This document shows, piece by piece, positions 15,491 through 59,415 of a stretch of DNA of 64,000 bases. Each line of letters opens with the position of its first letter. Position 1 is the first letter of the stretch. Location: positions 62,001 to 126,000 of the IMG/VR virus record IMGVR_UViG_3300033153_015063; one strand, written 5' to 3'. Made by a program: the position numbers and the translations under genes. The notes under the pieces were generated by a model, which was given only the letters and a program-made list of their open reading frames with translations, was not told where the DNA came from and ran no database searches.

Positions 15491-15528
15491 TTACGCTTTT
15501 TGTGGTTTAAATCAGGCAAACTTTATAT
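15491..15528 (+). promoter_or_regulatory. upstream motif plus TATA box driving the tRNA-like RNA at 15551
   Basis: TTACGCTTTTTGTGGTT at 15491-15507; TTTATAT at 15522. Confidence 0.65.
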
Positions 15529-15550
15529 TTCAGAGCTCGAAGGGAAGTGT

Positions 15551-15688: not shown

Positions 15689-15757
15689 TCGAAAGAGAGT
15701 AGATACACGAAGCATCCCGAGTGCCGGCGTAAATCGTCAGCCACAATTGGGGTTCCC

Positions 15758-27985: not shown

Positions 27986-29346
27986 AAAAAGTCTCTATCT
28001 TCCTCTTACTGAGTTCAGTAGTGTTACTCTCGATGCTGGGAACTGTTGCGTCTTTCAACCCATCTTACACAGTCTATGGGGTTATCGAGACGGTAGAAGG
28101 TAACCCTATCCAGGATGCAAGTGTCACGGTGACAAACACTGATACAAACGAGAGTCTGAATACTACCACAGGTAGTGAGGGGAAGTATCAGGTCAACCTC
28201 GGTAACCTTCCATCAGGATGGTCGATAGGCGATACCATCGACATCGAGGTATCTTTTGATGATGTCACTGTAAACGACAACTTCACCACATCTGGAAACA
28301 GAAAGATGGTGGACTTCGAGTTGACCTTCTCAGACCCGGTGGCAATCATCATCTTCACCCCCGAGACCGTCTTTGTGGGTGATGTTGTCGAGTTCGACGG
28401 GTCATCATCATGGTCTAACGGCACCATTACCAACTGGAACTGGATTTTCGGCGACGATGATGCCGATGGAGGTGTGGATGTAACACACGTCTATGATGAA
28501 GCGGGTGTATACGAGGTCAGCCTGGCGATTGTAGATAACTACACGATGGCCGATACTCACTCTATCAACATCACAGTTTTGGAACCGTTCTGGAGTGGTT
28601 CAGCGTCATACGAAGTCAGACAGGGTGTCGATAGATGGATTGACATCTCTGAAAACCTGGTCTCTGATGCTTCTGTCGAATGTGCCGATAGTAGAGTGTC
28701 CTTTGTAGTAGAAAACAGTACATTGTTGTTGTCTTTCAACGCCGGAGATACCAACACTACATTACAACTTTCCATCACCAAGGAATATATTGTATACCAA
28801 CACTACATTACAATCGTAGTAGTAGAGGTATTCAGTGCTACATTATCCGCCAGTAACATCAACTCGTCAGGATTGATAGAGATTGAACTCTCAATTAACG
28901 GTGGAAAAACGCCTTATAGTATCGTGTGGGATTGGGGCGACGGAAATTACACGAACCTCACTACAAACCTGATCGAACTATCTTCCACTCACAACTACTC
29001 ATCTGTTGGTAACTATTCTATAGTATCCACAGTCACGGATGATGATGAATATAGTGTTATCAACGAGTATACTATAACCTTTGCCGATGAGGATGAAGAC
29101 GATGATAGTGCAGGCAACACAGCTACAGTGCTTACTGAGAACCAGAAAAAACAGGTAAGTGCTGTAACTATTACTGCTCTTGAAGTAGTTTTAGTCCTCT
29201 TTATGACTGTTTTCCTTTTCATGGTAGTTTCTAAAGTTGTAGAAATGAATACAACTAAGCTTGTGTTTATTCTACTGATTATCAGTGGGGCTATCTCTCT
29301 TTTATATGGTTGGATTGACCTATTCAGATTATTGGCATGGTGGTAA
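27982..29346 (+). CDS. surface protein with PKD domains and two C-terminal TM helices
   Basis: GGAGGT RBS; signal peptide; WIFGDD and WDWGDG motifs. Confidence 0.8.
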
Positions 29347-32300
29347 AAATGGATTTAAAAGACAAACCTATGCTACTCAGTGTAATGCTGGTCATCGGCA
29401 TCTTCGCTGTCGGTGGAGTTCTATGGTATAGCGGTTACTTTACAGTAGTTGTAGAACCATATCCTGTAACTATCCACTCGGATAGTCTCGATGATCTCTC
29501 AGGTCATCTGAACCTTGAGGTCACTGACGAAGTAGACGACTACGACGACGATGGATGGTCATACGGTGACGAGGAAACCGATGAGTTGGGGAGTGGCTGG
29601 GCTGAGATACCAACGGCCCAACCAATCTCGGCATCCTTCTCGGTTTATGTCCGAGACTGGGGGGAGAAAGAACCCGATAACGATGGTGGGGTAGTTCATC
29701 ACAACCCATCGTTTGCCTTTTTTCTTTCAACAGCCGATACCCTGACCCTTGACGAAACCAATGGTGTCGAGGTAATCTCTCTCGGAGACTTCTACATCTT
29801 CGTCGGTCTGGTATGGGAGAACAAACACGACAGGTACAAAGTAGAGTTTGGTTGTATGGAGAACAAACTCCACCACAAACATCCTGGTCAGATGGATGCC
29901 CTCGATGACTGGCATGTCGTAGATATTATCTACGACGGAAATTATGCCTACCTCAATCTGGAAGAACGAGACCAGAAAGGTAAAGGGTGGAAACATGGCC
30001 TGTTCAGGTTGGACTGTAAGGTAGAAACTACTATCAGCTCAGTAGGGTTTGAGTTCAACAAGAACCACTTTCTCGATGGAATAACCCTGACTGACGATGG
30101 AGAAGGTTCAGAACCTTTCGTTGATGCTGGTGAGGATTTTGATGCCATAGAGGATGTCTCCTTTGATGTTTCGGGTGATTATGGACATATGCCTACCGAT
30201 GTTGATGGAGTCTGGTGGGACATGGATGACAGCGACGGTACCGACGACCGGGATATCGCCACCAGGGATGGTTCATGGGTCTACGGGGACCCAGGGATTT
30301 ACACCGCTACGTTCTGCGTCGAGCTTGACGATGCTTCTCTCTATTGTGATAGTATCGAAATAGAGGTCGAGGCGATCTATCCTGACACCGATGGAGATGG
30401 TATCACTGACCCAGACGACAACTGCCCATCAATCCCCAACCCTGGGCAAGAGGATAATGACCTGGACGGCCTGGGTGATGTCTGTGACCCCGACGATGAT
30501 AACGACGGCGTTCTTGACACTACAGACAACTGCCAGTTCATCTGGAACCCACTCCAGGCCGACAACGACCTGGATGGTCTGGGTGACGTCTGCGATGACG
30601 ACGACGACAACGATGGCATCCTTGATACTGTCGACAACTGTCAATACACCTACAATCCCTTGCAAACAGACATTGATAGCGATGGAGAGGGTGACGCTTG
30701 TGATGGAGACCTCGATGGTGATGGGGTTCCCAACACATCTGACAACTGCCCATCAATCCCCAACCCTGGGCAAGAGGATAATGACCTGGACGGCCTGGGT
30801 GATGTCTGTGACCCCGACGACGATGATGATGGAGTTCTGGATGGGCCAGACAACTGCCAATATGTAGCAAACCCCCTACAAACAGACACCGATGCAGATG
30901 GACTTGGAGATGCATGTGACCCTGACGACGATAACGACGGTGAACCCGACACTACGGATAACTGCCAACTCATCTACAACCCAGACCAGATTGATACCGA
31001 TAGTGATGGTCTGGGTGATGTCTGTGACCCTGATGATGATGATGATACAATCCTGGACCCCGTTGACAACTGCCCTTTGACAGCAAACTTGGGGCAGGAA
31101 GATAACGATGCCGATGGGATAGGGGACGTGTGTGACCCCGACGATGATAACGACGGTGTGTTGGATGGGCCAGACAACTGCCAATACACTCCAAACCCAT
31201 CTCAACTCGATACTGACAGCGATGGGGAGGGTGACGCCTGTGACACCGACGACGATGGAGACGGTGTGTTGGATGGTCCAGACAACTGCCCGTTGACGCC
31301 GAACCCAGGACAGGATGATACTGATGGAGACAGCCTTGGAGACCTGTGCGATCCTGACGACGACAACGACGGCGTTCTTGACTGGGCCGACAACTGCCAG
31401 TATGTCGTGAATCCATCCCAGGCCGACAACGACGGAGATTCACTCGGTGATGCCTGTGACCCTGATGATGATGATGATGGTGTTCTCGATGGGGCCGACA
31501 ACTGCCCCTTCACCCCCAACCCAGGACAGGAAGACCTGGACTCCGACGGCCATGGTGACGCCTGTGATGATGATTGGGACGGCGACGGTATTGATAACGG
31601 GGATGATAACTGCCCAATCGTCCCCAACCCGGGGCAGGAAGACGCTGACGAGGATGGGGTCGGCGATGCCTGTGAGGATGATACCGACGGTGATGGTATC
31701 CCTGACCCCCTGGATAACTGTGTGTTGACGCCTAACCCCGACCAGACTGACACGGACGGGGACGGTGACGGGGACGCTTGCGACACCGACGACGACGACG
31801 ATACAATCCTGGACCCAGACGACAACTGCCCCCTTATCCCCAATCCAGGGCAGGAGGACAACGACCTGGATGGTCTGGGTGATGTCTGTGACCCGGACGA
31901 CGACAACGACGAGATAGACGACCCAGAAGATAATTGCCCTCTGGTCACAAATCCAGGACAGGAGGACCTGGACGAGGACGGGGTCGGTGACGTCTGTGAT
32001 GACGACGATGATGGTGATGGTATCTCTGATGAAGATGATAACTGCCCGACCATCCAGAACCCTTCTCAGACTGACACTGACGTAGATGGAATCGGTGATG
32101 CCTGCGACAGCGATGATGATGGCGATGGTGTTCCTGATACTACAGATAACTGCCCCTTGACCCCGAACAGCGACCAGGCTGACACGGATGGGGATGGTAT
32201 AGGCGATGCCTGTGAGGAACCCATCACAATCATACTCTTTGACATCTCTGACAACGTCACCTACATCGTCAATACAAGGGTGAACTTCTCTGGAGTGATT

Positions 32301-32729
32301 ATCTCTCCAGAGGACTGTTCGTTCTTATGGGAGTTTGGTGACGACAGAACGGCAAATGTCAAGGGCCCGAGTCACATCTGGTTATGGCTTGGGGAGTTCC
32401 AGATGAACATCACCGTGACCTGCGACCTGGACGAGGAGAAGAAGGTTGTCAACGTGACTATCGTTGAATCTGCACCTGGTCCTGCTGGCAAGGCCGAGGT
32501 GGTGTCAAAGATGGAATATCCGTTGACATACTTCCTTGTGCCGTTCCTCGTGTTATTCGGTCTCGGACTGTTTGTGTTCCAGGCCCCGACGTTGGTAGAT
32601 AACCAGAAGTACGTCATGGCCGTTATGTTGGGCATCATAGCGATAATGATGTTCGAGTTCTTCGGCATCACCAGCTACTCTGTCAACTTTGGGGCGATCT
32701 ACTCTGGCATGGGAGTTACACCGAGGTGA
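29337..32729 (+). CDS. surface protein with PKD domains and 17 thrombospondin type 3 repeats
   Basis: 17 units of DNCP..PNP.Q.D.D.DG.GD.CD; N-terminal anchor; two C-terminal TM helices. Confidence 0.9.
30380..32216 (+). repeat. 17 x 108-bp coding repeat (thrombospondin type 3)
   Basis: counted DNC motifs; units 1 and 4 share about 80 identical bp. Confidence 0.85.
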
Positions 32730-34195: not shown

Positions 34196-34271
34196 TTACG
34201 CTTTTTACAGTTAACCCAGCCCAAACTATATAAAGACCAAGATGCGGGTAAGAGTTAGGTGATGTATGATG
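34196..34271 (+). promoter_or_regulatory. motif + TATA + UTR + RBS unit, copy 1 of 3
   Basis: 45-bp TATATAAAGACCAAGATGCGGGTAAGAGTTAGGTGATGTATGATG at 34227-34271. Confidence 0.9.
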
Positions 34272-35021
34272 GTTACAAAAGTAAAAATCGGAACGACCTT
34301 TCGCTCTGGACTTGCCGATGGAAACCCTCTCTGGAAGATTATCAAGAAAGTAGGATCTCGGCCGGCGACCTATCTCTGCGATGTCGTGAACGAACCCGTT
34401 GAGTTCAACGGAAAGATGTTTGATAGTGACTTCGCTGGCCACTCAGATACCTTCCTCAAGTCAGCAATCGAGCAGAAGCTCAGGTTCTCCGATGCTATCA
34501 ACCATCTGGTGGCCGAAAAAGAATCATTCTGGGACAGCCAGAAAGTTGGAACCACCTACCACTACCAGAGCTCCCGGGGCCAGTGGATTCGGGGAGTGGT
34601 TGATACCCGTGAGGACGACAAAGGTAGGACTGAGAAGTTCCTGAAGTGGACCAACCTTATCGGAGATTGGCGACATGAACTTCCTCAGGTCCGTGCTGAT
34701 GGTTCAGTCTACAAGGGTTACTATATTGAGAACATCGAGAAGGGAGATGGGAACTGTCCAAGTGAATCCCAACTCTATGAGTGTAACTCCGCCAAGTTCT
34801 CTGACAACCCTACCCAGATGGAACCTATCGACCTGACCATCCCCGAACCATCCGAGGATGAAAAGAAGGAACAAGAGCTCTGGCAGAAGGTCAACAAGGT
34901 CCGGGATCTCTTACAGTCCACCAACGAATCCATCAAGTCTGATGGAAAATCCCCCGAACATCTTCTCGATGAAATCAGGGGCGTCGTGGGTCAAGGTTAC
35001 AGACGCCTCTTCAATTTCTGA
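34266..35021 (+). CDS. phage-type hypothetical protein
   Basis: 251-aa ORF with strong promoter and RBS. Confidence 0.8.
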   Translation: MMVTKVKIGTTFRSGLADGNPLWKIIKKVGSRPATYLCDVVNEPVEFNGKMFDSDFAGHSDTFLKSAIEQKLRFSDAINHLVAEKESFWDSQKVGTTYHYQSSRGQWIRGVVDTREDDKGRTEKFLKWTNLIGDWRHELPQVRADGSVYKGYYIENIEKGDGNCPSESQLYECNSAKFSDNPTQMEPIDLTIPEPSEDEKKEQELWQKVNKVRDLLQSTNESIKSDGKSPEHLLDEIRGVVGQGYRRLFNF

Positions 35022-35343: not shown

Positions 35344-36255
35344 TTACGAATCTGATTGTCTGGCCCAGACGACCCAGCCCTGGGCCCTCTTCTGCATCCT
35401 GACAAAGTAACCGGCCTCCCTCCATGCATCCCGGATTGCATCTCCACCACTCCGTTCTTTCATAATGGCGATGACACGGTACTCCTTACCGTCGAACATC
35501 CTTTTGGAATTGATACCAGACTTCTTTGCCTTTGCCTTTGCCTTTTTGGCCTGACGGGCAGTCTTCAGGTTCCGCTTCGCCGCCCGTATCTGTTTCTTTG
35601 ACCTTGGAAGCTTGTGAGCCTCTTTGATGTTCTTCTTTGCCTGCTTCACCTGGGCCGATGTCGGGCGGTCAGAAATCTCGACGTCGATGGGGTCCCAACC
35701 CAGCTTCCCCCGGTACTTGTTGACCATACGGATGGCCTGCTGTTGCTTGGCCTTCGTGGCGAACTCACCCCTACCAGATTGTTTGATAGCGGCCCCGAGT
35801 GTCATGGTCCGTGATTGGAGGGTAGCCATGTTGATACCCTTCCGCCGGTCCTGGTCTATCTGTTCCAGAATCTTTTTCACTTCATCGGTGTGTGACAGAC
35901 CCTCTGGGTCGATGTCCTTTACCTGCCCCTTCGCACCGAGATAGATGGGTTTCCCTGACGCCATCTTTTTCCGTTCTGTGACCCGCTTTTTTGCTCTTCC
36001 CCCACCCTCTGTGGTCTCTCCCGTCCTCTCCCATGAATCTACGTAAGTGGCACGTTCGTCTCGCTTTCGGACCCTGGCGAGTTCCTCCTGGGCTGGCTTG
36101 ATGCGTTCCTCCAGTATGTCCTGGAGAGATTCCATGAACTCAGCCTCCTTCAGTGCCGGGGCCTCTCCCACAGGCCCCTTGTACACAGTTTTACCATTTT
36201 CGTACTCGTACCTGTATCTGTTACCGGACCCTGGTGGAATCTCAACGGTGGTCAT
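35344..36255 (-). CDS. leader-module protein with very basic, possibly nucleic-acid-binding cargo
   Basis: MTTVEIPPGSGNRYRYEYENGKTVYKGPVG; cargo paralogous to gene 43144. Confidence 0.85.
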   Translation of the reverse strand: MTTVEIPPGSGNRYRYEYENGKTVYKGPVGEAPALKEAEFMESLQDILEERIKPAQEELARVRKRDERATYVDSWERTGETTEGGGRAKKRVTERKKMASGKPIYLGAKGQVKDIDPEGLSHTDEVKKILEQIDQDRRKGINMATLQSRTMTLGAAIKQSGRGEFATKAKQQQAIRMVNKYRGKLGWDPIDVEISDRPTSAQVKQAKKNIKEAHKLPRSKKQIRAAKRNLKTARQAKKAKAKAKKSGINSKRMFDGKEYRVIAIMKERSGGDAIRDAWREAGYFVRMQKRAQGWVVWARQSDS

Positions 36256-36953: not shown

Positions 36954-38123
36954 GTGACACACCTGAAGGAGATTCCGAAGGGCAGCGGAAACCTTTACAT
37001 CTACGGTTATAACTCAGGAAAGAAGAGTGATGAATACATAGGGGTCTACTCCAGGGAAAAATGGGTTGAGTTAGCCCTGATGGAGAAGCTACAGAAGAGT
37101 GTCCAGGAACTCAGAGAAATCGAAGGTAGTCGTAGTGAAGATGAACGGGAGGAGGATGAAAGTGAGTTGAACAATGACCTCATCTACCCAGACGACCCAC
37201 GTATCAGAGAGTGGCTCATCGACCCATCCAAACTCGACGTAGTCGGTGTAGACCTCGATCTCAAATCGGTCCGAGATGAAATAATAAGACTCAAAAAGGA
37301 TAGTAAAAGTCTCGAAAGGGAAATAGGTGAGATGGAAAAAATTGGTGTTGAGAAAGAACGTTACGAAAATCTACTCTGGCGTAAAAAGGCAAAGGACCTG
37401 GAATTGAGACAAGCCATTTTCATCGAAAAATTCCCAAACACTACATCTTTCATAGTTTTCAATCCAGAACATATGAAGAACGTCATAAACGGAAAATACA
37501 ACTATGTCCTTCAAATAGGAAAAGAAGTTGATGGTTTTTCTGACCTTGGGATTCCACCACGACACATCTACGACATAGGTATCAACTACTTCAATGGTTC
37601 TCAGGAGAATTATGGGGCAGCTGGATCGTATCAGAGAAAAAATGAACATCACTTGCATGGTCAGTTGACCATACCTTACTATAAAAACAAACGAAAAAAG
37701 GGTCCAACTGAAGATGATAAACATACCATAATCCATGAAGTGGGTCATCACGTCCATACATCTACACTCCTTGGTCACAAAAAATTAAAAAAGTATTACA
37801 CCAAGTGGAACGAAGAGATGCATAAAATATCACTGACAATGCCACCAGCCGGAACCATGTCCAGGGTCCAGGCATATGGGAGTGACCCGCACGAAACGTT
37901 CGCCGAGAGATACGCAACCTATATCGACGGTAAGATGATAACAAATAAACAGATATTAAATAAACAAGTTACAACACTAAAAAGTAAAACTAAATTAACT
38001 AAAAAAGAGAAGAAAGAGATAGAGATATTGGAGGATGAGATAACCGCATCTAAAACGATACTAGATTTTTTCTCTGAAACGTTTAAAGCTATCGAACAAG
38101 TAGACCTCAACAGGAGAGAATGA
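36954..38123 (+). CDS. divergent leader fused to a zincin-like metallopeptidase
   Basis: EIPKGSGNLYIY; IIHEVGHHVH followed by ETFAE. Confidence 0.8.
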   Translation: MTHLKEIPKGSGNLYIYGYNSGKKSDEYIGVYSREKWVELALMEKLQKSVQELREIEGSRSEDEREEDESELNNDLIYPDDPRIREWLIDPSKLDVVGVDLDLKSVRDEIIRLKKDSKSLEREIGEMEKIGVEKERYENLLWRKKAKDLELRQAIFIEKFPNTTSFIVFNPEHMKNVINGKYNYVLQIGKEVDGFSDLGIPPRHIYDIGINYFNGSQENYGAAGSYQRKNEHHLHGQLTIPYYKNKRKKGPTEDDKHTIIHEVGHHVHTSTLLGHKKLKKYYTKWNEEMHKISLTMPPAGTMSRVQAYGSDPHETFAERYATYIDGKMITNKQILNKQVTTLKSKTKLTKKEKKEIEILEDEITASKTILDFFSETFKAIEQVDLNRRE

Positions 38124-40443: not shown

Positions 40444-41226
40444 GTGGAAGTTGAGTATTACCTTCATATAGCATGTTTCTGGAACATCAAGCGTACCAAG
40501 TATCATGCTAACAGAGATGAGAGGAGGGACATCTTCTCTGGAACTCTCTGCTTCGAAAGATTGAGGAGTCCCAACAAGACCACCTATCTGGTCCATCGTC
40601 GGGTCTATCCATTGGTATTGATGGTGTTCCAGGACCTACGCATCCTCAGTGTAGTTCCAGTGAAGGAAGAACAACATAAAATATTCTACGGACAGTGGAA
40701 AGAAGATTGCCGTGAATCCATCAGAATGATTGCCGATGCAATCGAAAATAAAAAGTTGAATGCCAATGTAGGTTATCGTAAATATATACTCCAGATAGTG
40801 ACTGCAACTATGTTTGAGGATGAAATTAAAGAGGAACTATCACATTATTTGAGTAGACTACCCAGAGGTCATATAAAAAATCACGTTAACAAATTCCGAA
40901 GCAGCTTGACAAGGATGTACATGTTTCATACCTGGTTCTTTAACTGTTATAGTAAAATTGTTCAGAGTCTACCAGTGCCAGTAACCACAGAAAGTTCCGA
41001 GTACAGAATAGTACAAGTTATGGGTCGTAATACAAAGAATAGTACCAGGGCAATCAGATATAAGCTGGAGGAAAGATTTATAGATGGTAACAAGAGATGT
41101 ATAAAACACTACGACACAATAGAAGAGGCCGAGAATAAAAAAATGATGTATGAACAACTTAGAGATGAAAAACACATCAGAGATTTAATAGATAATGACT
41201 TGAGGAAATCCTTTTCTGGTGAATAG
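40444..41226 (+). CDS. hypothetical protein
   Basis: 260-aa ORF. Confidence 0.7.
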   Translation: MEVEYYLHIACFWNIKRTKYHANRDERRDIFSGTLCFERLRSPNKTTYLVHRRVYPLVLMVFQDLRILSVVPVKEEQHKIFYGQWKEDCRESIRMIADAIENKKLNANVGYRKYILQIVTATMFEDEIKEELSHYLSRLPRGHIKNHVNKFRSSLTRMYMFHTWFFNCYSKIVQSLPVPVTTESSEYRIVQVMGRNTKNSTRAIRYKLEERFIDGNKRCIKHYDTIEEAENKKMMYEQLRDEKHIRDLIDNDLRKSFSGE

Positions 41227-41427
41227 ACTTACACCTTATTATACTATAAGTATATATAGAGGAAATGCGTTTAACTGTGGCAGTTAGTAAGGATAGTGCC
41301 ACAGTTAAACACTTTTTTTTACCTTTGGCCAAAGTGAAACTATAGATTCCACTTTATTAAAATCCACTTTATTAAAATGGGTTGTATGAAATTGGTTGTA
41401 TAGTGAATGTTGACCTGTTCGAGTAAC

Positions 41428-41880
41428 TCAGATCCAGTACTCTTCCTCCTCATCTGCCTTGCGTTCCTCTTCTTCCTTCTCCTTTATCCTTCTGTCCCAC
41501 TCTTCTTCTGTGAGTGGTGACGCTTTGTGACACTTCTGGATGAACTCTTCAGATACCATCCACATCTCTTCAGCATAGTGGATCTTACATTGTGGACAAA
41601 AAGATGTTGCCACACCACCAGAACATTGTGGGCAGAGTGGGATAAGATACTCCTCGATGCCGTTGAACCTGAAATCATTCCCATGTAACATCCGGTGCCT
41701 CTTGTCAAGCTCTGCGGTGGTAAATTTCTCCCACTCTTCTGGGTTTTTATCCTGTAGCAGTTTGACGATCCAACAGGCACTCACCTCTCTCTCCATGTTT
41801 CCAAAGGATGCAAAAAAGTGTTTTTTTGTGTCGATATCCATTGGTTTGATAGTCTCTTCGGGATCATCTATGTCATCCAT
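41428..41880 (-). CDS. hypothetical zinc-ribbon protein
   Basis: CPQC...CPQCKIH. Confidence 0.7.
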   Translation of the reverse strand: MDDIDDPEETIKPMDIDTKKHFFASFGNMEREVSACWIVKLLQDKNPEEWEKFTTAELDKRHRMLHGNDFRFNGIEEYLIPLCPQCSGGVATSFCPQCKIHYAEEMWMVSEEFIQKCHKASPLTEEEWDRRIKEKEEEERKADEEEEYWI

Positions 41881-41968
41881 ACATTCGAAAAGGTAGGTAC
41901 GAGTTTAAAAAGATAAATGAAAAAGATGGGCCGAGAAAAATCAAGGGGGGCCCAGACTTCTCGACCCA

Positions 41969-42044
41969 AGGCGGGTAGCGGATTCGAACCGCTGTGGTCT
42001 CTACAGGTGATGTATGATATGAGACACACCTCCATCGACCCACC
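41969..42044 (-). ncRNA. 76-nt tRNA-like RNA lacking a D-stem, with an anti-RBS loop
   Basis: acceptor GGTGGGT/ACCCGCC; stem GTCTC/GAGAC around loop ATATCATACATCACCTGTA; T arm AGCGG-TTCGAAT-CCGCT. Confidence 0.7.
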
Positions 42045-42340
42045 ATTTGACCAGAGGACCTTATAGATCCAATCCCCTGGTCCCCCGGAGGACAATCCAA
42101 AGATGACCATCCGGGTCCTTCGTAGTTCAGTATATCCTGCTTCGGTTCACCCCCATCTGATGGTGGGTATTTCACTCTCAGCAGTCCCCCGGTCCAGGGT
42201 GTATCAAACTTCCCAAGGGGGGCACCCAGCGGGCAATCCTGTGAAGGGTTCGCCAGGTGGATACTCTCAAACTCCGTGTGTGTTGTTGTTGTTGTTATTT
42301 CAGTTGCTGGCTACTTTTGTAACCACCTCCGTTGAAAGTG
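42045..42340 (-). ncRNA. putative structured RNA co-transcribed upstream of the tRNA-like element
   Basis: hairpins GACCAGGGGA/TCCTCTGGTC, CCCGGA/TCCGGG and CTGCT/AGCAG; motif at 42377-42393 and TTTAAGAA box at 42362; no convincing CDS. Confidence 0.45.
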
Positions 42341-42406
42341 AATATATGTGGGAGTTCTTAAAGATTTCTGGAGTTCAACCGTAAAAAGCGTAATGATACT
42401 CGGAAC

Positions 42407-42949
42407 CTATATCCTTCGCCCAATGGACTGAACATGCCTATCACGGGTTTTGCCGACTATCGGGGTTCCAACCACGTAAAAGCTATCAGGGTACTTTGCC
42501 AGGTCTCTGGTCACCCATTCGTTCCCACCCATCGAAAGGCCATACTTATAGATGGCCGATCTGACACGTTTTGATTGTTGACGAAAACCCTTACCAACCC
42601 TGAAACCAAGTTTGAGAAGTTCATCTCCATCGAGTGTGTAGTAGTTCTTATATGCTTCTGGGTCCTTCAACCGGAATTTTACTACATTTTCGGTGACCTC
42701 GGCCTTCAGGAAATACCCTTCAGGCAAAGGGACGTTTGATACGAGACCAGGGTTTTCCCTGACCACAGTCGGAGAGAGATTCTTCAGGTCAATCGTTTTG
42801 ATGTCCTTGGTCATAGCCGCCATGAACTCCACTTCTGTCAACTCTGGTTCATTCCCAACTGGACCTCGATAATCATTTTTCTGTGTAGATTGATTATAAG
42901 TGTATCTATAAAGGTTCCTATCTCCTATAACTACAATGAAATCTGACAC
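42407..42949 (-). CDS. leader-module protein, variant form
   Basis: NLYRYTYNQSTQKNDYRGPVGNEPELTEVEFMAAM. Confidence 0.8.
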   Translation of the reverse strand: MSDFIVVIGDRNLYRYTYNQSTQKNDYRGPVGNEPELTEVEFMAAMTKDIKTIDLKNLSPTVVRENPGLVSNVPLPEGYFLKAEVTENVVKFRLKDPEAYKNYYTLDGDELLKLGFRVGKGFRQQSKRVRSAIYKYGLSMGGNEWVTRDLAKYPDSFYVVGTPIVGKTRDRHVQSIGRRI

Positions 42950-43143: not shown

Positions 43144-43641
43144 CTACTTCCCCTTCCTGATGGCTACAGAGAGTGGTTTCCAACCATGACCATCTCTCCA
43201 TTTATTGATTACCACAATGGCTTTTTTCTTCTGTTCATTCGTCATCTTCGAGGTCTGTTCCACAATACCCTTCAATCTCATCGAACGTGCATGTATGGTG
43301 CCCCTGTTAACACCTTCATCCATGTCCTCGTCGAGTTCGATGAGTATGTTTTTGACCTCACGAACATCCGAAAGACCCTTCGGGGCAAAATCTCTGACCT
43401 GCCCAGGTCTACCGAGATAGACATTCTCACCACCTGGTACTACAATCCTCTTCCCTTCGACGTATGTGACACGCCTATCCCTTTCTCTAACACCCACCAC
43501 CTTCATAATCTCCAGGAACTCCCCCTCGTCCAGGGCTGGTGCTTCTCCTACAGGCCCCTTGTACTGAGTTTGTTGTGTGGCCTGGTCATAGACATACCTG
43601 TATTTATTCCCTGAACCTGGAGGGATTTCAACTATGGACAT
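43144..43641 (-). CDS. leader-module protein
   Basis: MSIVEIPPGSGNKYRYVYDQATQQTQYKGPVG. Confidence 0.85.
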   Translation of the reverse strand: MSIVEIPPGSGNKYRYVYDQATQQTQYKGPVGEAPALDEGEFLEIMKVVGVRERDRRVTYVEGKRIVVPGGENVYLGRPGQVRDFAPKGLSDVREVKNILIELDEDMDEGVNRGTIHARSMRLKGIVEQTSKMTNEQKKKAIVVINKWRDGHGWKPLSVAIRKGK

Positions 43642-43702
43642 TACAGACACCTAGGATGATTATGGATGAGCTGAGGAGTATATAAATGTCCCGTTAACTT
43701 AT

Positions 43703-44612: not shown

Positions 44613-45112
44613 CGTAACCAGGAAGATGGCTCAGGATTTTCCCACTTATCCTTAACCTTCTCTACCAATTCATCATCTCTTTTCTGGACCAACTCAGATA
44701 CCTTCATCCCTTTCTCGGTCAGTCCGCCCCAATATTCAGCGTAAGAATATTCTTTAAACATAGTTCTGATTTTCCCTCCAGTTAATCTCCACTCCATCAG
44801 ACCTTTTCGTTCCATTACCTTATAGGTGACCATTGGATAAAGGATGTGTTGTCCTCTACTTATATGGAAGTTAGTGTCTGAATCTACATCCCACCCTTTT
44901 CTCCCAAACAGTATAAGAACTTCCTTCTGTGTAGGGGAAAGTTCTTTGTAGATTTCTTCGATTTCTTTATTCTCAGTACCCATCCCCTTCAAGAACTCAG
45001 CCTCTCCCAGCTCAGGAGAATCCCCGACCGGCCCCTTGTACTGTGTCTTGCCGCCTTCATATTCGTAGCGGTATCTATTCCCTGAGCCTGGTGGAATCTC
45101 TACAGTGGTCAT
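44609..45112 (-). CDS. leader-module protein, possible winged-helix cargo
   Basis: MTTVEIPPGSGNRYRYEYEGGKTQYKGPVG; LSPTQKEVL...LTEKG. Confidence 0.85.
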   Translation of the reverse strand: MTTVEIPPGSGNRYRYEYEGGKTQYKGPVGDSPELGEAEFLKGMGTENKEIEEIYKELSPTQKEVLILFGRKGWDVDSDTNFHISRGQHILYPMVTYKVMERKGLMEWRLTGGKIRTMFKEYSYAEYWGGLTEKGMKVSELVQKRDDELVEKVKDKWENPEPSSWLR

Positions 45113-46280: not shown

Positions 46281-46688
46281 CTAAAACTCCACTTGAAGCT
46301 CGTTGTAATAGTCCCGAGGGCTTTTCGGGGAACGGCCGGCAATCAAATCACTGTTGAATAAATCGACCATATCACCGATAGTATCAGCAGCCCTATTTAA
46401 ATAATCTTCACAATCTGTATCACAATCTATAGGTAAATCTAACTGTTTTAACTGTTCAGATGTTATATAGTCATTGATATATGCATTATCGTCCTCTGCA
46501 AATTGTGAAAAGAAATATGTTAATCCAGACATCTGATAATGGTTCACCGTATTCCTGAACATCTCCAGGAACTCCCCCTCGCTCATCTCAGGAGAATCCC
46601 CGACCGGCCCCTTGTAGACCGTAGCTCCCTCTTCATATTCATAGCGGTATCTGTTACCTGAGCCAGGAGGGATCTCGACAATGGTCAT
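46281..46688 (-). CDS. leader-module protein with AT-rich cargo
   Basis: MTIVEIPPGSGNRYRYEYEEGATVYKGPVG. Confidence 0.85.
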   Translation of the reverse strand: MTIVEIPPGSGNRYRYEYEEGATVYKGPVGDSPEMSEGEFLEMFRNTVNHYQMSGLTYFFSQFAEDDNAYINDYITSEQLKQLDLPIDCDTDCEDYLNRAADTIGDMVDLFNSDLIAGRSPKSPRDYYNELQVEF

Positions 46689-46824
46689 CAAGGAATAGAA
46701 GGGGTGGTGGGTATAAAAATGTGATGGTGGGGTGTGGTGGGTGCCCCGGTTCCTTCATTTCTATCTTCCATTTTCCATCACTACTCAATTTTTTCATTTA
46801 ACTTACAACTAATTATATGAATGG

Positions 46825-47859: not shown

Positions 47860-48678
47860 TCATTCATTAATTTTACTTCCATCACCTTCAATATACAGTG
47901 CTATTCTACTATAGTTCCTGTCAAGTACTGCACGAACACCACCAGCTCTCCATCCCTTCTTTCGTCTGGTAACTATTCCCATTTTCTCCAACTCAGAGGC
48001 TATCTCTGATGCGTTCAGACCCTTTTCATCCAGTTCCCTGATGATAACGATGACTGTCTGTTCATCTTCTCTCTCAATCAATCTGGTGTTTTCTTTTTTG
48101 AGAACACCGCCACCCTTGTCGACTACATCGGATTTGACTTTGTAGCCATATGGTGCCTGCCCCACCCACTCTCCTGAACGCTGTTTTTGTTTGACACCTC
48201 GACGGGTATGCTGAGAAATCTTCATCCTCTCGTACTCTGCCATGTTGACCAGTTGCACGAACACAGAACGCCCCTCGGCTGTCCAAAGATCCAGGAATCT
48301 TACGGACTTGATAACCAACCTGACGCCGTATTTCCTGAGCTCATCCAGCATCCATAGGGCTTCCTTCACATCCCTCCCGAAACGATCCTCTTTTGCCACC
48401 GCAACGATGTCAAAAGCACGTTCCCTGGCGTCCGCAAGGAGTTGCTGGATCGCTTCTCTCTTCTCGATAGATGAACCCGTTTCCTCATCAGAGTAGGTCC
48501 TGGTCCATCTCCACCCACTTTCCTCATCGCACCATTCCTTGATTTCCTTCTCCTGGGCAGGTAGTGAGAAACGCCCTGAGATGAGTTTGTCGGACTTGCG
48601 AATGTATGCGACCACGATGAAACTCGGGCCGTCTTGTTCAAGCTTTGCGGTTGACAACTGAAATTTTGTACTGGGCAA
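47860..48678 (-). CDS. serine recombinase (resolvase domain plus recombinase-type C-terminus)
   Basis: AYIRKS catalytic motif; YSDEETGS...R; DRFGR; GQAPYGY. Confidence 0.9.
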   Translation of the reverse strand: MPSTKFQLSTAKLEQDGPSFIVVAYIRKSDKLISGRFSLPAQEKEIKEWCDEESGWRWTRTYSDEETGSSIEKREAIQQLLADARERAFDIVAVAKEDRFGRDVKEALWMLDELRKYGVRLVIKSVRFLDLWTAEGRSVFVQLVNMAEYERMKISQHTRRGVKQKQRSGEWVGQAPYGYKVKSDVVDKGGGVLKKENTRLIEREDEQTVIVIIRELDEKGLNASEIASELEKMGIVTRRKKGWRAGGVRAVLDRNYSRIALYIEGDGSKINE

Positions 48679-49282: not shown

Positions 49283-50233
49283 ATGTCAGAAACACGTAAA
49301 CGAGTGGCGATGTATATCAGGGTCTCAATCGACGAACAATCCAGGGATGGATACGATGTCAAGTCCCAGGTCAGAAATCTTCGCAATTATATTGCTATGA
49401 AAGAAGGGTGGATTGAAGGTTGGGAATATAGTGATGATGGTTACGATTGTGATGAGAAAAGGCCGGCTTATGAACGGTTGTGGGATGAAATAGATGAATG
49501 GGATGTTCTTCTCATCTGGAAGTTGGACCGTATCCACAATGACATGCCAGGTTTACTGAACATGGGCATCAAACTGGCAGACAACGACAAGGACCTGGCG
49601 TCAGTCAGTGAACTTATCGACACCACTTCTGACATGGGCCGTCATCTCTATCACATCTTCGGAGCTCTGATCCAATTCGAGAACAAAAACCCACGTTCTG
49701 TCTCTCTACCCCATCCTACTTTCATTGATGATGGAGTAGTGGCCGATAGTCAAGAAGTGGAAGTTCCTACCCCTGAAACAGGAACGCCGGTAGCTACGCT
49801 TACAGGTAAGTGGATAACATCTCCACCATTTGGTTATGATATTGACAAAGAACCAGAGTCAAAGGGCCACCTGGTCGTGAACGAGGAAGAAAGTAATGTT
49901 GTTAGATACATCTTCTATCTACGGTTCAAGTTAGAGAACCCCGACTTATTCAAACCATATCAGTGGGATAGTAAGAGAGCCGGCCTCAATGTCCCATACT
50001 ACCGCACCTACCAGGACATCGCAGACCTACTCCACGACAAAGGTATCAGAACAAAGAAGGGAAAGCGATGGACTCCTTGTGCCATCAGAAGGGTCTGTGT
50101 TAACCCCATCTACTGGGGTATATTCAGGTACGGGAGTGAAGAAATGTTGGGTGGACATGAACAATTAACCCCCGAACCAGGTACTGCGGCGATGGGTGAG
50201 TGGGATTGGAAACCGCCCGATGGAGAAGAGTAA
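49283..50233 (+). CDS. serine recombinase
   Basis: MYIRVSIDEQ; RPAY; WKLDRI; PPFGY; IA..L...GI.T..G..W; NPIYWG. Confidence 0.9.
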   Translation: MSETRKRVAMYIRVSIDEQSRDGYDVKSQVRNLRNYIAMKEGWIEGWEYSDDGYDCDEKRPAYERLWDEIDEWDVLLIWKLDRIHNDMPGLLNMGIKLADNDKDLASVSELIDTTSDMGRHLYHIFGALIQFENKNPRSVSLPHPTFIDDGVVADSQEVEVPTPETGTPVATLTGKWITSPPFGYDIDKEPESKGHLVVNEEESNVVRYIFYLRFKLENPDLFKPYQWDSKRAGLNVPYYRTYQDIADLLHDKGIRTKKGKRWTPCAIRRVCVNPIYWGIFRYGSEEMLGGHEQLTPEPGTAAMGEWDWKPPDGEE

Positions 50234-55713: not shown

Positions 55714-55899
55714 TTACTCACTCTCCATGAAGACATCAGGGATAGCCTCGATCATGTCCGTACCATCCTCATTCTGCAACCAGTCGATGGCATACCAAAG
55801 GATTTTCAGCTTCCTCCAGGTGTTCTTGTCATCCTTGTGGACGGTCTGTAGCCGGGCCCTGATTTCACGCTTCGTTTGTGTAAGATTTTTGGACATCAT
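55714..55899 (-). CDS. small protein, first gene of the ArdC-like operon
   Basis: directly after copy 2 of the 45-bp promoter/RBS unit. Confidence 0.75.
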   Translation of the reverse strand: MMSKNLTQTKREIRARLQTVHKDDKNTWRKLKILWYAIDWLQNEDGTDMIEAIPDVFMESE

Positions 55900-55969
55900 A
55901 CATCACCTAACTCTTACCCGCATCTTGGTCTTTATATACTTTCAGGCCAAACAACCGTAAAAAGCGTAA
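55894..55969 (-). promoter_or_regulatory. motif + TATA + UTR + RBS unit, copy 2 of 3
   Basis: 55894-55938 is identical to 34227-34271; motif at 55953-55969. Confidence 0.9.
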
Positions 55970-56260
55970 AAGAACATTTCGTACTCTCAAGGTGTGATGG
56001 GATTTGAAGAAATTTATGGTGGTAGGATTGAAAAAACGCAGGGCCCCGTATGCCATGACACCCAACCGTCGTTGGGTACTGGGACGACTCCCAGGAGATG
56101 CACGTGCGATTACCTCGACGGGACCCCGCCCACCCTCACACTTCGGTTCTCGTCAGTGGCTTTTGGCCACTTTATTCGATACACCTCCGAGGGTGGACCA
56201 CACAATCTATGATTGGTGGCAACGTAAGGTATTACAGGATGTGTTGATTAAGATTTCGGT

Positions 56261-56602
56261 CTATCTTTCATCCCCTGAACCGTGTAGCTTCTGGTCCGCT
56301 TTTCTCTTCGAGAGCTTCTGGACGTTCTTCTCCAATACATTGTTGAAGCTCAGGCCGAGGGTGTCACATATCCTGGCCAGATACCAACAGACGTCCCCGA
56401 TTTCTTTCTCTATAAGTGGCACATCGAGTTTTTCATCACGATACCACTTCTTGACCTTCTCGGCTATCTCTCCAGTCTCACCAGTGAGACCGAGTGTCAG
56501 ATACATGACCTCGACTATCTTCTCGTGTTTGGCCTGGTCGAGAGATGGGTAGACTACTGTGGTTTTCGTGAAAGCCTGGTATTCATCGGGGTCCATACCC
56601 AA
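56261..56602 (-). CDS. MazG-like nucleotide pyrophosphohydrolase
   Basis: LGLTGETGEIAEKVKK, KEIGDVCWY, N..KL..R...GSGDER. Confidence 0.85.
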   Translation of the reverse strand: MGMDPDEYQAFTKTTVVYPSLDQAKHEKIVEVMYLTLGLTGETGEIAEKVKKWYRDEKLDVPLIEKEIGDVCWYLARICDTLGLSFNNVLEKNVQKLSKRKADQKLHGSGDER

Positions 56603-57727: not shown

Positions 57728-58045
57728 TCATAGTCTGGTTTTTCTGATACTTCGTAGGAAATCCAGACTTTTCCGTGTCAATCGAAAAACTTCCATCTCC
57801 ATCTCTATCAGATACCCATCTACGATAAGTTTTTCGAGGGTAGTAGAGTGGAAGGTTTGACCTTCGGGACGCCAACATTTTTCCCCAAACTCCCACATAA
57901 GTTGTTGGCGGTCAACATCCAACATATAATCTCCAGATAATATATTGTCGATGTGTATTAGATTGATACGATAGATAACGTCGTATAGGATTTTTTCATC
58001 TATATTATCGGATTCAAAAGAATCCAGACTTTCACTTCCTTCCAT
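57728..58045 (-). CDS. small protein, possible winged helix
   Basis: TLEKLIVDGYL...FRLTRKS. Confidence 0.6.
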   Translation of the reverse strand: MEGSESLDSFESDNIDEKILYDVIYRINLIHIDNILSGDYMLDVDRQQLMWEFGEKCWRPEGQTFHSTTLEKLIVDGYLIEMEMEVFRLTRKSLDFLRSIRKTRL

Positions 58046-59345
58046 TTTTCAGGACCTTCACGTAGTTGACAATGGTCTCCTTATTTCCGTTGTAGCTGTT
58101 CTGCTTCTTGACCTTGGCAGAGATGGTAACGATTGTTCCTTCCTGGATGTTGTCCCGATTCTCATTGGCGAACCACTTGACGGATCGACCAGTGGGGTTA
58201 TCATCGTCATCGACCTCGTCCATGATATGAAGCGTCCAGGCACCATACCCACTCTGGCCCGACCTGTGTGCCTTGACATGGACCCGCACACTGACCTTAT
58301 CACCTTCTTTTCCGAGGAATCCATTGGCTGTGTTGGTGGGTGTCTTCGAGGCAAGGCTCTGGGCGTTCTCACGGGTGTAGGCGGAAACGATGCTGGCCAC
58401 GATACCGAGAGACCTCCGGGTGAGGGCGATGGATTTTGAAGCCGCATTCATGTTCCTTTCGTAGTCCGACATGGGTTTCAGGGCCCGGCGGGCCCAGTCA
58501 AGGGCATCGGCAGCGAGTTTCTGGTCGGCGTCGGTGGGATTCCACCGTTTCCATTCACTCTTGGTCATGGTCTCGGGGGGGTCGAAAAGGCGGAGTGCGA
58601 TATTGGCCGTTGAGTGGACACCATCCTCCTCTGCCTTCCATTTCGGCATCCAGCCGCCGATACGGATGCAGACAGCGACAGCGGTCAGATAGTCTTTGGT
58701 GTCAATCTCCCAGTAATCGTGGCTATACTCACCCATGTCATCAATGGACCGCATGACCACGTTGATGGTCTTCTGATAGTTGGCGAGGGTCTTGGGGTCG
58801 ATGCCACCGAGATAATCTCGGACGCACTTCGATCCAACCTGCTTGTAGACGCCGGTGTCCTCTTCGAGAACCACGTAGGTGATCTTCCGGGCGGATCTAC
58901 CTGCCTTCTTGGTCCCACAGTGGTCACACATAAACCGACCCCGGAACGTCTCGGGGATGACCTCGCCAGGCACAGAGTAGAACACCTCGGTACCCTTTTT
59001 ATCCTCGGTCTTGAGTTTCTCGATGGACCCGATGAGCTGGAACCCCTCGATATGGGGTGCCTCACCGGTTATTCGAACAATGGCCCACTGGCAGAGTTCT
59101 GCGTAATAATTGCTGGGCTTTCCGTTCACCCTGATGGGACACACCTGGTCCTTGGCCTTTCCCCTGAAGTCCTTTTCCGTCCACTTTTCGATGAGTGTCA
59201 TGGTGGGCTCAGGGAATCCGTACTTCAGGGCCTTCTTTGCCTGCTGCCCGATTTTCTTCTCCAGGGTCTCCAGATTATACTGGGGGATGAGGAAGAGTTC
59301 AGGGTCCTTCCCAACAAGTGTTTCGGCGGTTTCATAATCCATCAT
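58032..59345 (-). CDS. phage-type protein with a zinc motif and a C-terminal OB-fold-like region
   Basis: CDHC...QVGSKCVRDYLG; ISAKVKKQNSYNGNKETIV. Confidence 0.8.
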   Translation of the reverse strand: MMDYETAETLVGKDPELFLIPQYNLETLEKKIGQQAKKALKYGFPEPTMTLIEKWTEKDFRGKAKDQVCPIRVNGKPSNYYAELCQWAIVRITGEAPHIEGFQLIGSIEKLKTEDKKGTEVFYSVPGEVIPETFRGRFMCDHCGTKKAGRSARKITYVVLEEDTGVYKQVGSKCVRDYLGGIDPKTLANYQKTINVVMRSIDDMGEYSHDYWEIDTKDYLTAVAVCIRIGGWMPKWKAEEDGVHSTANIALRLFDPPETMTKSEWKRWNPTDADQKLAADALDWARRALKPMSDYERNMNAASKSIALTRRSLGIVASIVSAYTRENAQSLASKTPTNTANGFLGKEGDKVSVRVHVKAHRSGQSGYGAWTLHIMDEVDDDDNPTGRSVKWFANENRDNIQEGTIVTISAKVKKQNSYNGNKETIVNYVKVLKNGRK

Positions 59346-59415
59346 ACATCACCTAACTCTTACCCGCATCTTGGTCTTTATATAGTTTTGGCTGGGTTAA
59401 CTGTAAAAAGCGTAA
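59340..59415 (-). promoter_or_regulatory. motif + TATA + UTR + RBS unit, copy 3 of 3
   Basis: one mismatch to 34196-34271. Confidence 0.9.

What the first reader, a model, noticed from the sequence alone, without database searches (positions are those of the whole stretch)
42045..42393. Long structured non-coding transcript ending in the tRNA-like element
Seen: a motif-plus-TATA promoter (42393-42355) is followed by an unstructured (AAC)n/CA tract, then several GC-rich hairpins, then the tRNA-like unit. Near its 5' end, TGGTTACAAAAGTA (42325-42312) is identical to 34270-34283, the bases immediately after one antisense target. I see no RNase P or SRP signature. Inference: a ~370-nt ncRNA whose 3' end is defined by tRNA-like processing.
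Basis: partly seen in the sequence, partly recalled or inferred. Interest (0 to 1): 0.6.

Follow-up and report, generated by a model that had tools for sequence, protein, structure and literature searches.

The report
Viral tRNA-shaped antisense RNA gene
A 526-base non-coding gap in a 243-kb archaeal-type virus genome looks like a gene for a ~0.4-kb RNA ending in a tRNA-shaped module, whose enlarged loop is complementary to the ribosome-binding site and start codon of at least six of the virus's own genes; expression is untested and no relatives were found.

Summary
The described features are in the sequence. The window is part of a 242,596-bp virus record with archaeal-type promoters. One such promoter, with a perfect 20-nt upstream motif but a weak TATA, opens a 526-bp gap at 41881-42406 that is non-coding by codon statistics.

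On the minus strand the gap holds, in order:
- an SD-like GGAGGUG and a small hairpin
- a 25-nt A/C tract
- a 55% GC body
- a 75-nt tRNA-like unit (42044-41970)
- a hairpin followed by T5

The unit has a 7-bp acceptor stem, a canonical T arm, no D arm and a 19-nt 'anticodon' loop. It is not a tRNA by Rfam or ARAGORN.

The decisive extra fact is that 14-16 nt of that loop are perfectly antisense to the SD plus AUG of six promoter-cassette genes, against 0.03 matches expected.

I read it as a virus-encoded riboregulator on a tRNA scaffold, probably trimmed by RNase P and tRNase Z (confidence about 0.45).

Weak points:
- The body is not significantly structured.
- No expression data exist.
- No homologue was found in any collection, so covariation could not be tested.

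The parts
42374..42393 (-). Upstream promoter motif, a perfect 20-mer shared with two other promoters
   Evidence: 39 core sites in the genome against about 1 expected.
42355..42368 (-). BRE-like GAAA plus weak TATA box TTTAAGAA at the spacing fixed in the other promoters
   Evidence: matrix score -0.1 bits, above the random 99th percentile but far below the main class. It groups with a weak-TATA subclass that also drives a second tRNA-like RNA.
42331..42335 (-). Predicted transcription start, 27-31 nt after the first T of the TATA box
   Evidence: Inference from archaeal promoter geometry and from the cassette genes. Not measured.
42309..42330 (-). SD-like GGAGGUG (42330-42324) and a 6-bp hairpin with AAAA loop (42324-42309).
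   Evidence: (z -2.4). GGAGGTG occurs twice in the RNA against 0.03 expected.
42276..42300 (-). A/C-only tract including (AAC)5, predicted single-stranded
42045..42275 (-). GC-rich body (55% GC against 46.6% for the genome). Hairpins at 42199-42187, 42184-42137, 42115-42084 and 42082-42049.
   Evidence: Only the pair at 42120-42047 is clearly better than shuffles (z -2.9). The minus strand folds 7-13 kcal/mol better than the plus strand.
41970..42044 (-). tRNA-like unit. Acceptor stem 42044-42038 with 41976-41970. D-replacement 42037-42026, containing GGAGGUG. Stem 42025-42021 with 42001-41997. T arm 41993-41977. Discriminator U at 41969.
   Evidence: pair probabilities 0.45-0.98 for the acceptor and 0.87-0.97 for the T stem. 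Not a tRNA. Unique in the genome by its own covariance model.
42002..42020 (-). 19-nt loop. Positions 42018-42005 (to 42003 for two targets) are antisense to SD plus AUG of the cassette genes. Its CAU pairs with the start codon.
   Evidence: six perfect targets against 0.03 expected. Duplex -23.6 kcal/mol against -10.0 for SD with the 16S 3' end.
41920..41967 (-). 10-bp-stem hairpin (41967-41928) followed by AUC and T5 (41924-41920). Likely terminator. Further T5 runs at 41940-41936 and 41911-41907.
   Evidence: z -2.9. A bacterial-type scan misses it because of its large loop. Oligo-T as an archaeal terminator is established knowledge.
34257..34283 (+). Target 1: SD plus double AUG of ORF 34266-35021 (34257-34270), followed directly by the 14-mer that recurs in sense at the RNA's 5' end
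59341..59354 (-). Target 2: SD plus AUG of ORF 58032-59345 (437 aa)
55895..55908 (-). Target 3: SD plus AUG of a 61-aa ORF, 55714-55899

Best explanation
The gap 41881-42406 is a gene for a non-coding RNA of an archaeal-type virus.

Proposed steps, all inferred rather than measured:
- Transcription starts near 42333 from a standard viral promoter with a weak TATA. It ends at the hairpin and oligo-T near 41920, giving about 410 nt.
- The 3' tRNA-shaped module keeps exactly what RNase P, tRNase Z and the CCA-adding enzyme need: a 12-bp acceptor/T minihelix and a canonical T loop.
- These enzymes probably cut it at 42045/42044 and after 41969. That would give a stable ~76-nt tRNA-shaped RNA and a ~290-nt 5' fragment, or a ~365-nt RNA if only the 3' cut occurs.
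- The module's 19-nt loop pairs over 14-16 nt with the Shine-Dalgarno sequence and start codon of at least six viral mRNAs that share one promoter and leader cassette, plus about five near-matches.
- This would block 30S binding and so repress the set, or mark the mRNAs for duplex-specific cleavage.

Shown by sequence analysis: non-coding status, promoter copy, tRNA-like geometry, complementarity far beyond chance.
For: - Non-coding: codon scores of the overlapping ORFs match spurious ORFs, while flanking genes score 0.15-0.26. No family hits.
- The gap is one of 9 gaps of 500 nt or more in a genome that is 89% coding. It carries a GC island (0.59 in 150 nt) like those over the tRNA clusters.
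- The promoter is a perfect 20/20 motif copy. The same promoter type drives tRNA-Leu and a second tRNA-like RNA.
- The acceptor and T arms are perfect while the D arm is gone. That is the pattern expected if processing signals are kept, not of random decay.
- The loop has six perfect 14-16-nt TIR targets against 0.03 expected. All six have motif plus TATA upstream.
- The complementary stretch fits inside the loop.
- The duplex is more than twice as stable as SD with anti-SD.
- The anti-AUG half of the loop is predicted open, with P(unpaired) 0.8-0.95.
- The minus strand folds better than the plus strand.
- Anti-RBS sRNAs are an established archaeal mechanism: sRNA154 and sRNA41 (PMC5867862). 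An antisense RNA controls an early transcript in halovirus phiH (as summarised in PMC8707807).
Against: - There is no expression evidence, because no sequencing run was listed.
- No homologue was found anywhere, so no covariation test was possible.
- The TATA is weak.
- The 230-nt body is not more structured than shuffles and has no assigned role.
- The six targets are copies of one repeated cassette, so they count as one independent match.
- The anti-SD half of the loop is predicted to be partly masked by an internal AGGUGUGU.
- In full-length MFE folds the acceptor stem is not always formed.
Confidence: 0.45

Rival explanations
1. The unit is a decayed viral tRNA gene or recombination scar. 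It lost its D arm and picked up a fragment of the leader cassette in inverted orientation. It has no function of its own, whether or not it is transcribed.
For: The virus carries at least 8 tRNA genes and several odd tRNA-like sequences. The leader cassette is a dispersed repeat that could recombine. The sense 14-mer and the antisense 14-mer derive from one contiguous 27-nt stretch of gene 34266, which shows a duplication or inversion history. No conservation data exist.
Against: Decay should hit all arms, yet acceptor (7/7), T stem (5/5) and T loop are perfect, and a perfect promoter motif sits upstream. Similarity to the cassette stops exactly at the loop borders, with no cassette remnant beside it.
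Confidence: 0.2
2. The region is an untranslated part of a neighbouring mRNA: a 3' UTR of the operon ending at 42407, or a long leader of ORF 41428-41880. The tRNA-like unit serves only as an RNase P / tRNase Z 'punctuation' site. The antisense match is incidental.
For: Only 14 nt and no T-run separate the stop codon of ORF 42407-42949 from the promoter motif, so read-through is likely. tRNA punctuation and MALAT1-type 3' ends are established (PMC8457004).
Against: The region has its own perfect promoter motif. A hairpin with oligo-T lies before the next gene, which has its own TATA about 30 nt before its ATG, as leaderless genes of related contigs do. The 14-16-nt match has about 2e-4 probability by chance (my estimate counts).
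Confidence: 0.15
3. The AGGTGATGTATGAT at 42005-42018 on the plus strand is a real translation start for an 18-codon ORF (42010-42066). It is then not an antisense element.
For: It is a perfect copy of the leader used by six genes. Small proteins of 36-61 aa follow this leader elsewhere.
Against: It is the only perfect copy without the motif or TATA in the 110 nt upstream. The T loop reads correctly only on the minus strand. The minus strand folds better.
Confidence: 0.05
4. The tRNA-like unit is an attP site for integration into a host tRNA gene, as proposed for halovirus HF2.
For: HF2 has such a tRNA-like attP (PMC8707807). Two serine recombinase genes lie 5.5-8 kb away, at 47860-48678 (-) and 49283-50233 (+).
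Against: No tyrosine integrase is in the genome. The 21-nt T-arm/acceptor 3' end occurs in no archaeal genome among 185,579 species, only in one Micromonospora. Both acceptor strands are present, and the loop carries viral rather than tRNA sequence. The genome is a 243-kb record with direct terminal repeats.
Confidence: 0.04
5. One of the ORFs in the gap encodes a protein: 41873-42175 (-), 41868-42110 (-) or 42103-42384 (+).
For: The frames are open for 80-100 codons.
Against: Codon scores are -0.08, -0.02 and -0.11 against 0.18 +/- 0.06 for genes. The products are Pro/Gly/Ser/Arg-rich. No family hits. No leader cassette lies in front of them.
Confidence: 0.03

Closest known systems
MALAT1/mascRNA and NEAT1/menRNA: tRNA-like 3'-end modules of long non-coding RNAs in mammals
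   Same: A tRNA-shaped unit lies at the 3' end of a longer non-coding transcript. It has an acceptor/T minihelix but no decoding function. RNase P and RNase Z define the ends and release a small tRNA-like RNA (PMC8457004).
   Different: Here the setting is an archaeal-type virus. The unit has a 19-nt antisense loop that mascRNA lacks, and a hairpin with oligo-T follows it. Processing is inferred, not shown.
Archaeal trans-acting anti-RBS sRNAs (Methanosarcina mazei sRNA154 and sRNA41)
   Same: An intergenic sRNA whose exposed sequence masks ribosome-binding sites of several mRNAs and represses translation (PMC5867862).
   Different: Those are cellular and have no tRNA scaffold. Here the pairing also covers the start codon, and the targets share a repeated viral leader cassette.
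Halovirus phiH antisense RNA against the early lytic transcript T1
   Same: An archaeal virus uses an antisense RNA to silence its own early mRNA. The duplex is then cut by a host RNase (as summarised in PMC8707807).
   Different: phiH's RNA is cis-encoded (it overlaps its target) and has one target. This one is trans-encoded, short-seeded and multi-target.
Halovirus HF2 tRNA-like gene HrrHF2_450 (attP)
   Same: A low-scoring tRNA-like sequence in an archaeal virus that does not fold as a normal tRNA (PMC8707807).
   Different: HF2's lies next to an integrase and matches host tRNA 3' ends. Here there is no tyrosine integrase and no matching tRNA.
Murid herpesvirus 68 TMERs, bacterial YrlA Y RNAs and plant-virus 3' tRNA-like structures (from my own knowledge)
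   Same: Viral or cellular RNAs that fuse a tRNA-like domain to a regulatory RNA and borrow tRNA-processing enzymes.
   Different: The domain order and partners differ. None presents an antisense sequence in the anticodon-loop position. Rfam found no match.

Membership tests
tRNA (Rfam RF00005) | Cloverleaf with D arm, 7-nt anticodon loop, and a score above the family threshold | tested here: not met
   No hit even at E<=10. ARAGORN finds nothing with or without introns, or in mitochondrial mode. Twelve unpaired nt replace the D arm and the loop is 19 nt.
tRNA (Rfam RF00005) | 7-bp acceptor stem stacked on a 5-bp T stem, with a UUCRAAU T loop | tested here: met
   Direct reading. Pair probabilities 0.45-0.98 and 0.87-0.97.
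tmRNA, RNase P RNA, SRP RNA or any other Rfam family | Covariance-model match | tested here: not met
   No gathering-score hit in 64 kb. The best permissive hit is SpF41 at 22.8 bits against 52 needed. ARAGORN finds no tmRNA.
tRNA-like 3'-end processing module (mascRNA type) | Acceptor/T minihelix at the 3' end of a longer non-coding transcript | tested here: met
   Geometry. Promoter about 290 nt upstream. Non-coding.
tRNA-like 3'-end processing module (mascRNA type) | Cleavage by RNase P and RNase Z, and CCA addition | not testable with these tools
   No RNA data: no run was listed.
Trans-acting anti-RBS small RNA | Complementarity to the SD/start region of several mRNAs beyond chance, in an accessible segment | tested here: met
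   Six perfect 14-16-nt sites against 0.03 expected. Duplex -23.6 kcal/mol. The 5' half of the loop is open and the 3' half partly masked.
Trans-acting anti-RBS small RNA | Own promoter and terminator in an intergenic region | tested here: met
   Motif plus weak TATA. Hairpin plus T5. This is sequence evidence only.
Trans-acting anti-RBS small RNA | Expression, and repression of the targets | not testable with these tools
   Uncultured virus; no reads available.
attP-type tRNA fragment | Identity to the 3' part of a host tRNA gene | tested here: not met
   The 21-mer is absent from all archaeal genomes of the 185,579-species set. The host genome may be missing from that set.
attP-type tRNA fragment | Adjacent integrase | tested here: inconclusive
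   No tyrosine integrase. Two short serine recombinases lie 5.5-8 kb away.
Protein-coding gene | Codon usage like the genome's genes, or homologues | tested here: not met
Conserved structured RNA | Covariation across homologues | tested here: inconclusive
   No homologue was found in INPHARED, IMG/VR, JGI metagenomes or the relatives' loci by covariance model.

The most novel reading that the evidence does not exclude
This would be a new kind of riboregulator, a 'tRNA-scaffolded antisense RNA'. tRNA-processing enzymes would cut the virus's transcript to release a stable, possibly CCA-tailed, tRNA-shaped RNA. Its anticodon-position loop reads a 14-16-nt 'super-codon' (SD plus AUG, with CAU on the AUG). 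It would thereby switch a whole set of viral genes off at the ribosome-binding step, or compete at the 30S P-site/platform as a mimic of initiator tRNA plus anti-SD. It would be the first trans-acting sRNA regulon described for an archaeal virus.
Probability: 0.25. Interest if true: 0.85.

Novelty: new variant of a known kind. Interest (0 to 1): 0.62.

Why it matters
Very little is known about post-transcriptional control in archaeal viruses. phiH's cis-antisense RNA is the usual example.

A trans-acting RNA that borrows the tRNA fold for stability and processing, and carries an anti-SD/AUG seed in the anticodon position, would link three things. These are tRNA-like 3'-end processing (known from mammalian lncRNAs), anti-RBS sRNAs (known from methanogens) and viral temporal control.

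It is directly testable in vitro with archaeal RNase P, tRNase Z and 30S subunits. It would also give a compact, programmable scaffold for gene silencing in archaea.

It further suggests how such regulators arise: by duplication and inversion of a target gene's 5' end.

Tried and rejected
- Rfam at gathering and permissive thresholds: nothing.
- ARAGORN in bacterial, intron and mitochondrial modes: nothing at the locus.
- RF00005 on the whole genome: 8 real tRNAs, not this unit.
- blastn against 50,697 phage records: no match.
- Both flanking proteins: no Pfam or PHROG hit, and no relatives in IMG/VR by pattern.
- The upstream protein has only itself among 5.8 billion proteins.
- Promoter-motif scans of IMG/VR gave chance singletons only.
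- A motif-plus-TATA scan of JGI metagenomes gave nothing.
- Sequencing runs: none was listed.
- PolB gave the nearest relative, a 116.7-kb JGI contig at 58% identity. Only 12 kb of it could be read and the whole record is not searchable. That piece holds only ordinary tRNAs. I did not walk further along it, because a session may hold only part of a metagenome record.
- A second relative's contig had no DNA available.
- A profile of the 40-copy N-terminal domain found 23 short related contigs. They hold no homologue of the RNA and use leaderless starts, so an anti-SD RNA is not expected there.
- A bacterial-type terminator scan misses the 3' hairpin.
- Rejected readings: intron-containing tRNA (no bulge-helix-bulge can be drawn around the loop, and there is no D arm), split or permuted tRNA (both acceptor strands are adjacent), attP, and protein-coding.
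- No broken toxin gene was handled. No alternative genetic code was needed.

Full report
CONTEXT

The window is bases 62001-126000 of a 242,596-bp IMG/VR virus record with direct terminal repeats. Several things mark it as a virus of an archaeon:
- About 39 copies of a 17-nt motif are each followed, at fixed spacing, by a BRE/TATA element (GAAAsTATATAAAG). About 25 nt further on lies a Shine-Dalgarno sequence and ATG.
- It has eight tRNA genes above the Rfam threshold, and ARAGORN draws introns in four of them.
- It has a family B DNA polymerase. More distant relatives of this polymerase (30% identity) include one from a Methanospirillaceae MAG.
- It has large PKD- and TSP3-repeat proteins.
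- My rough gene call gives 312 genes and 89% coding.

THE OBSERVATION

Promoter. The 20 nt at 42393-42374 are a perfect copy of the promoter motif. Only two other promoters match all 20. At the usual spacing lie GAAA and TTTAAGAA (42368-42355). On a matrix built from the other 38 promoters this segment scores -0.1 bits. The main class scores 19-25, and the 99th percentile of random positions is -2.3. It belongs to a weak-TATA subclass that also includes the promoter of a second tRNA-like RNA. By archaeal promoter geometry the start should be near 42335-42331 (inference).

The predicted RNA begins with an SD-like GGAGGUG and a 6-bp hairpin with an AAAA loop. A 25-nt A/C tract with (AAC)5 follows at 42300-42276. 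Then comes a body of 231 nt at 55% GC, against 46.6% for the genome.

NON-CODING STATUS

The gap 41881-42406 is one of only nine gaps of 500 nt or more. Three ORFs of 80-100 codons overlap it. On a codon log-likelihood trained on 96 long genes they score -0.11, -0.08 and -0.02. Genes score 0.18 +/- 0.06, spurious ORFs score -0.07 +/- 0.11, and the flanking genes score 0.15 and 0.26. Their products look unlike real proteins and hit no family. The gap's GC island (0.59 over 150 nt) resembles those over the tRNA clusters.

HOW STRUCTURED IS IT?

The whole 421-nt stretch has z -2.6. Sliding 120-nt windows show that the body 42080-42280 is only 0.4-1 sd better than dinucleotide shuffles. The signal comes from the 3' end, with z -3.1 to -3.3. 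Single elements do better:
- the hairpin pair at 42120-42047: z -2.9
- the 5' hairpin: z -2.4
- the 3' hairpin: z -2.9

The minus strand folds 7-13 kcal/mol better than the plus strand across 42000-42200, which fits a minus-strand RNA. So 'long structured transcript' is only partly borne out.

THE tRNA-LIKE UNIT (42044-41970)

It has these parts:
- a 7-bp acceptor stem (GGUGGGU with ACCCGCC)
- a 5-bp T stem with loop UUCGAAU, joined directly to the acceptor 3' strand as in real tRNAs
- a 3-nt variable region
- a 5-bp stem (GUCUC with GAGAC) closing a 19-nt loop
- 12 unpaired nt where the D arm should be
- a discriminator U, with no encoded CCA

Acceptor and T stems are robust in the ensemble (0.45-0.98 and 0.87-0.97). 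A fold constrained to keep them is within 0.2 kcal/mol of the MFE. It is not a tRNA: RF00005 gives no hit even at E<=10 and ARAGORN gives nothing. A covariance model of the unit finds only itself in the genome.

A hairpin with a 10-bp outer stem (41967-41928) follows, then AUC and T5. Two more T5 runs lie nearby. Oligo-T is the archaeal termination signal (established knowledge).

THE DECISIVE EXTRA FACT

Loop positions 42018-42005 are the exact complement of AGGUGAUGUAUGAU. This is the SD, spacer and first AUG of the leader cassette.
- The genome holds six such sites, against 0.03 for shuffled 14-mers. All six have motif plus TATA upstream and an ORF of 61-437 aa downstream.
- Two of them match over 16 nt. 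Four more sites have one mismatch and nine have two.
- No other part of the RNA has multi-copy matches.
- The loop's CAU pairs with the annotated start codon.
- The duplex is -23.6 kcal/mol, against -10.0 for the same leader with a 16S 3' end.

The six sites are copies of one repeat, so they count as one independent event. Even so, a 14-mer shared between this gap and a 75-nt cassette has about 2e-4 probability (my estimate). Similarity stops at the loop borders, and the copy inside the unit is the only one without a promoter. It is therefore neither a decayed cassette nor a gene start.

The target genes are mostly of unknown function. One has DUF6011. A near-match target is an AAA_5 ATPase.

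TGGTTACAAAAGTA at 42325-42312 equals 34270-34283. One singleton 14-mer is about what chance gives genome-wide, and another unrelated one exists. But this one is the first codons of ORF 34266 and overlaps by one base the antisense target at 34257-34270. So a contiguous 27 nt of that gene appears in the RNA gene as an antisense half in the loop and a sense half at the 5' end. The 5' end reads like that leader with its ATG-containing 10 nt deleted. I take this as a trace of origin by duplication and inversion of a target's 5' region (inference).

MECHANISM

The best reading is a virus-encoded riboregulator.
- The perfect minihelix, kept while the D arm was lost, is the minimal substrate of RNase P, tRNase Z and the CCA-adding enzyme (established knowledge). 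Processing into a ~76-nt tRNA-shaped RNA, as for MALAT1/mascRNA (PMC8457004), is therefore plausible.
- The loop would mask SD and AUG of the cassette mRNAs. Methanosarcina sRNA154 and sRNA41 mask ribosome-binding sites in the same way (PMC5867862). The effect would resemble phiH's antisense RNA (PMC8707807).
- Two GGAGGUG copies (0.03 expected) and the A/C tract may bind 30S subunits or an Sm-like protein. One copy can also pair with the anti-SD half of the loop, where P(unpaired) is 0.2-0.45 against 0.8-0.95 for the anti-AUG half. That suggests a partly masked seed. These last points are speculation.

RIVALS

- attP. There is no tyrosine integrase. The 21-nt 3' end is in no archaeal genome of 185,579 species. 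Two serine recombinases lie 5.5-8 kb away.
- A dead tRNA relic, a UTR with tRNA punctuation, or a plus-strand 18-codon ORF remain possible. They are scored in the rival explanations.

COMPARATIVE SEARCH

No homologue was found. Searches covered INPHARED, IMG/VR, JGI metagenomes, the protein database and sequencing runs.

The nearest relative is a 116.7-kb contig at 58% PolB identity. It was readable for 12 kb only. That piece shows a variant of the promoter motif (TTACTCTTTTTACTCTT) but no such RNA.

Twenty-three short related contigs use leaderless starts and lack the RNA.

Covariation therefore could not be tested, and expression is unknown. This caps the confidence at about 0.45.

Noticed in passing
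window 42785-42949(-), 43486-43650(-), 44948-45112(-), 36091-36255(-), 46527-46691(-), 24549-24713(+), 61010-61174(+) and about 30 more across the genome: About 40 genes of this virus share a highly conserved N-terminal ~45-aa domain (consensus MTTVEIPPGSGNRYRYEYE..TVYKGPVG..PEL.E.EF) joined to unrelated C-termini. It has no Pfam match. Relatives at 42-69% identity occur on 23 metagenome contigs. The gene just upstream of the RNA is a member. From memory only, the motif resembles the N-terminus of inorganic pyrophosphatase. That resemblance was not tested.
   Followed up: partly
window 15491-15700 (+): A second promoter-driven, GC-rich tRNA-like RNA (about 150 nt), missed by ARAGORN and RF00005. 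It has a 7-9-bp acceptor stem, a normal D arm, a 7-bp stem with the 8-nt loop CCGUCAUA, an extra arm of about 55-65 nt, and a T arm with one mismatch. Its loop can pair with GUAUGAUGG of the same leader consensus (9 bp with one G-U). This may be a related device or an odd intron-bearing tRNA.
   Followed up: partly
window 10773-10872 (-): tRNA-Thr(GGU), for which ARAGORN draws a 28-nt intron. The default ARAGORN run on the window misses it. Intron mode and RF00005 find it (37.5 bits).
   Followed up: partly
outside the window: genome 175560-176300 (-): The tRNA cluster holds repeated units that start GGAGTGCTGTAGA, with T-arm-like parts but no normal cloverleaf. One ends ...ACAUCACCUCC, which resembles a 16S rRNA 3' end.
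   Followed up: no
window 42010-42066 (+): An 18-codon ORF lies behind the perfect leader copy on the plus strand, inside the tRNA-like unit. It has no promoter motif or TATA upstream.
   Followed up: partly
window 41200-41360 and 43240-43359: Very stable local folds. The first has z about -6 on the minus strand and -3.6 on the plus strand. It lies between the convergent genes 40444-41226(+) and 41428-41880(-), so it is likely a two-way terminator. The second has z -6.2 on the minus strand only and lies inside ORF 43144-43650.
   Followed up: no
window 47860-48678 (-) and 49283-50233 (+): Two short serine recombinases (Resolvase plus Recombinase domains, 272 and 316 aa) in divergent orientation.
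   Followed up: no
L051 8456-8573; L078 about 194; L085 about 50: Related viruses carry variants of the promoter motif (TTACTCTTTTTACTCTT, TTACCAGTTTTACTGTT, TTACACTTTTTACACTT). The element is basically two tandem TTTTTAC-type repeats upstream of the TATA box.
   Followed up: partly
window 29337-32729 (+), 8599-10743 (-), 26471-29346 (+): Large proteins with 17 thrombospondin type 3 repeats and PKD domains. They are likely virion surface or adhesion proteins.
   Followed up: no
window 55900-56260: Another non-coding gap with a GC island (0.60 over 150 nt) next to a cassette promoter. It is a possible further RNA gene, or a poorly scoring ORF at 56004-56552.
   Followed up: no
window 36954-38123 (+): Sub-threshold Pfam hit to the ATLF domain (E 0.005, 17 bits against a cut-off of 27.4). 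It is not significant. At most it hints at a zinc-metalloprotease-like fold.
   Followed up: no
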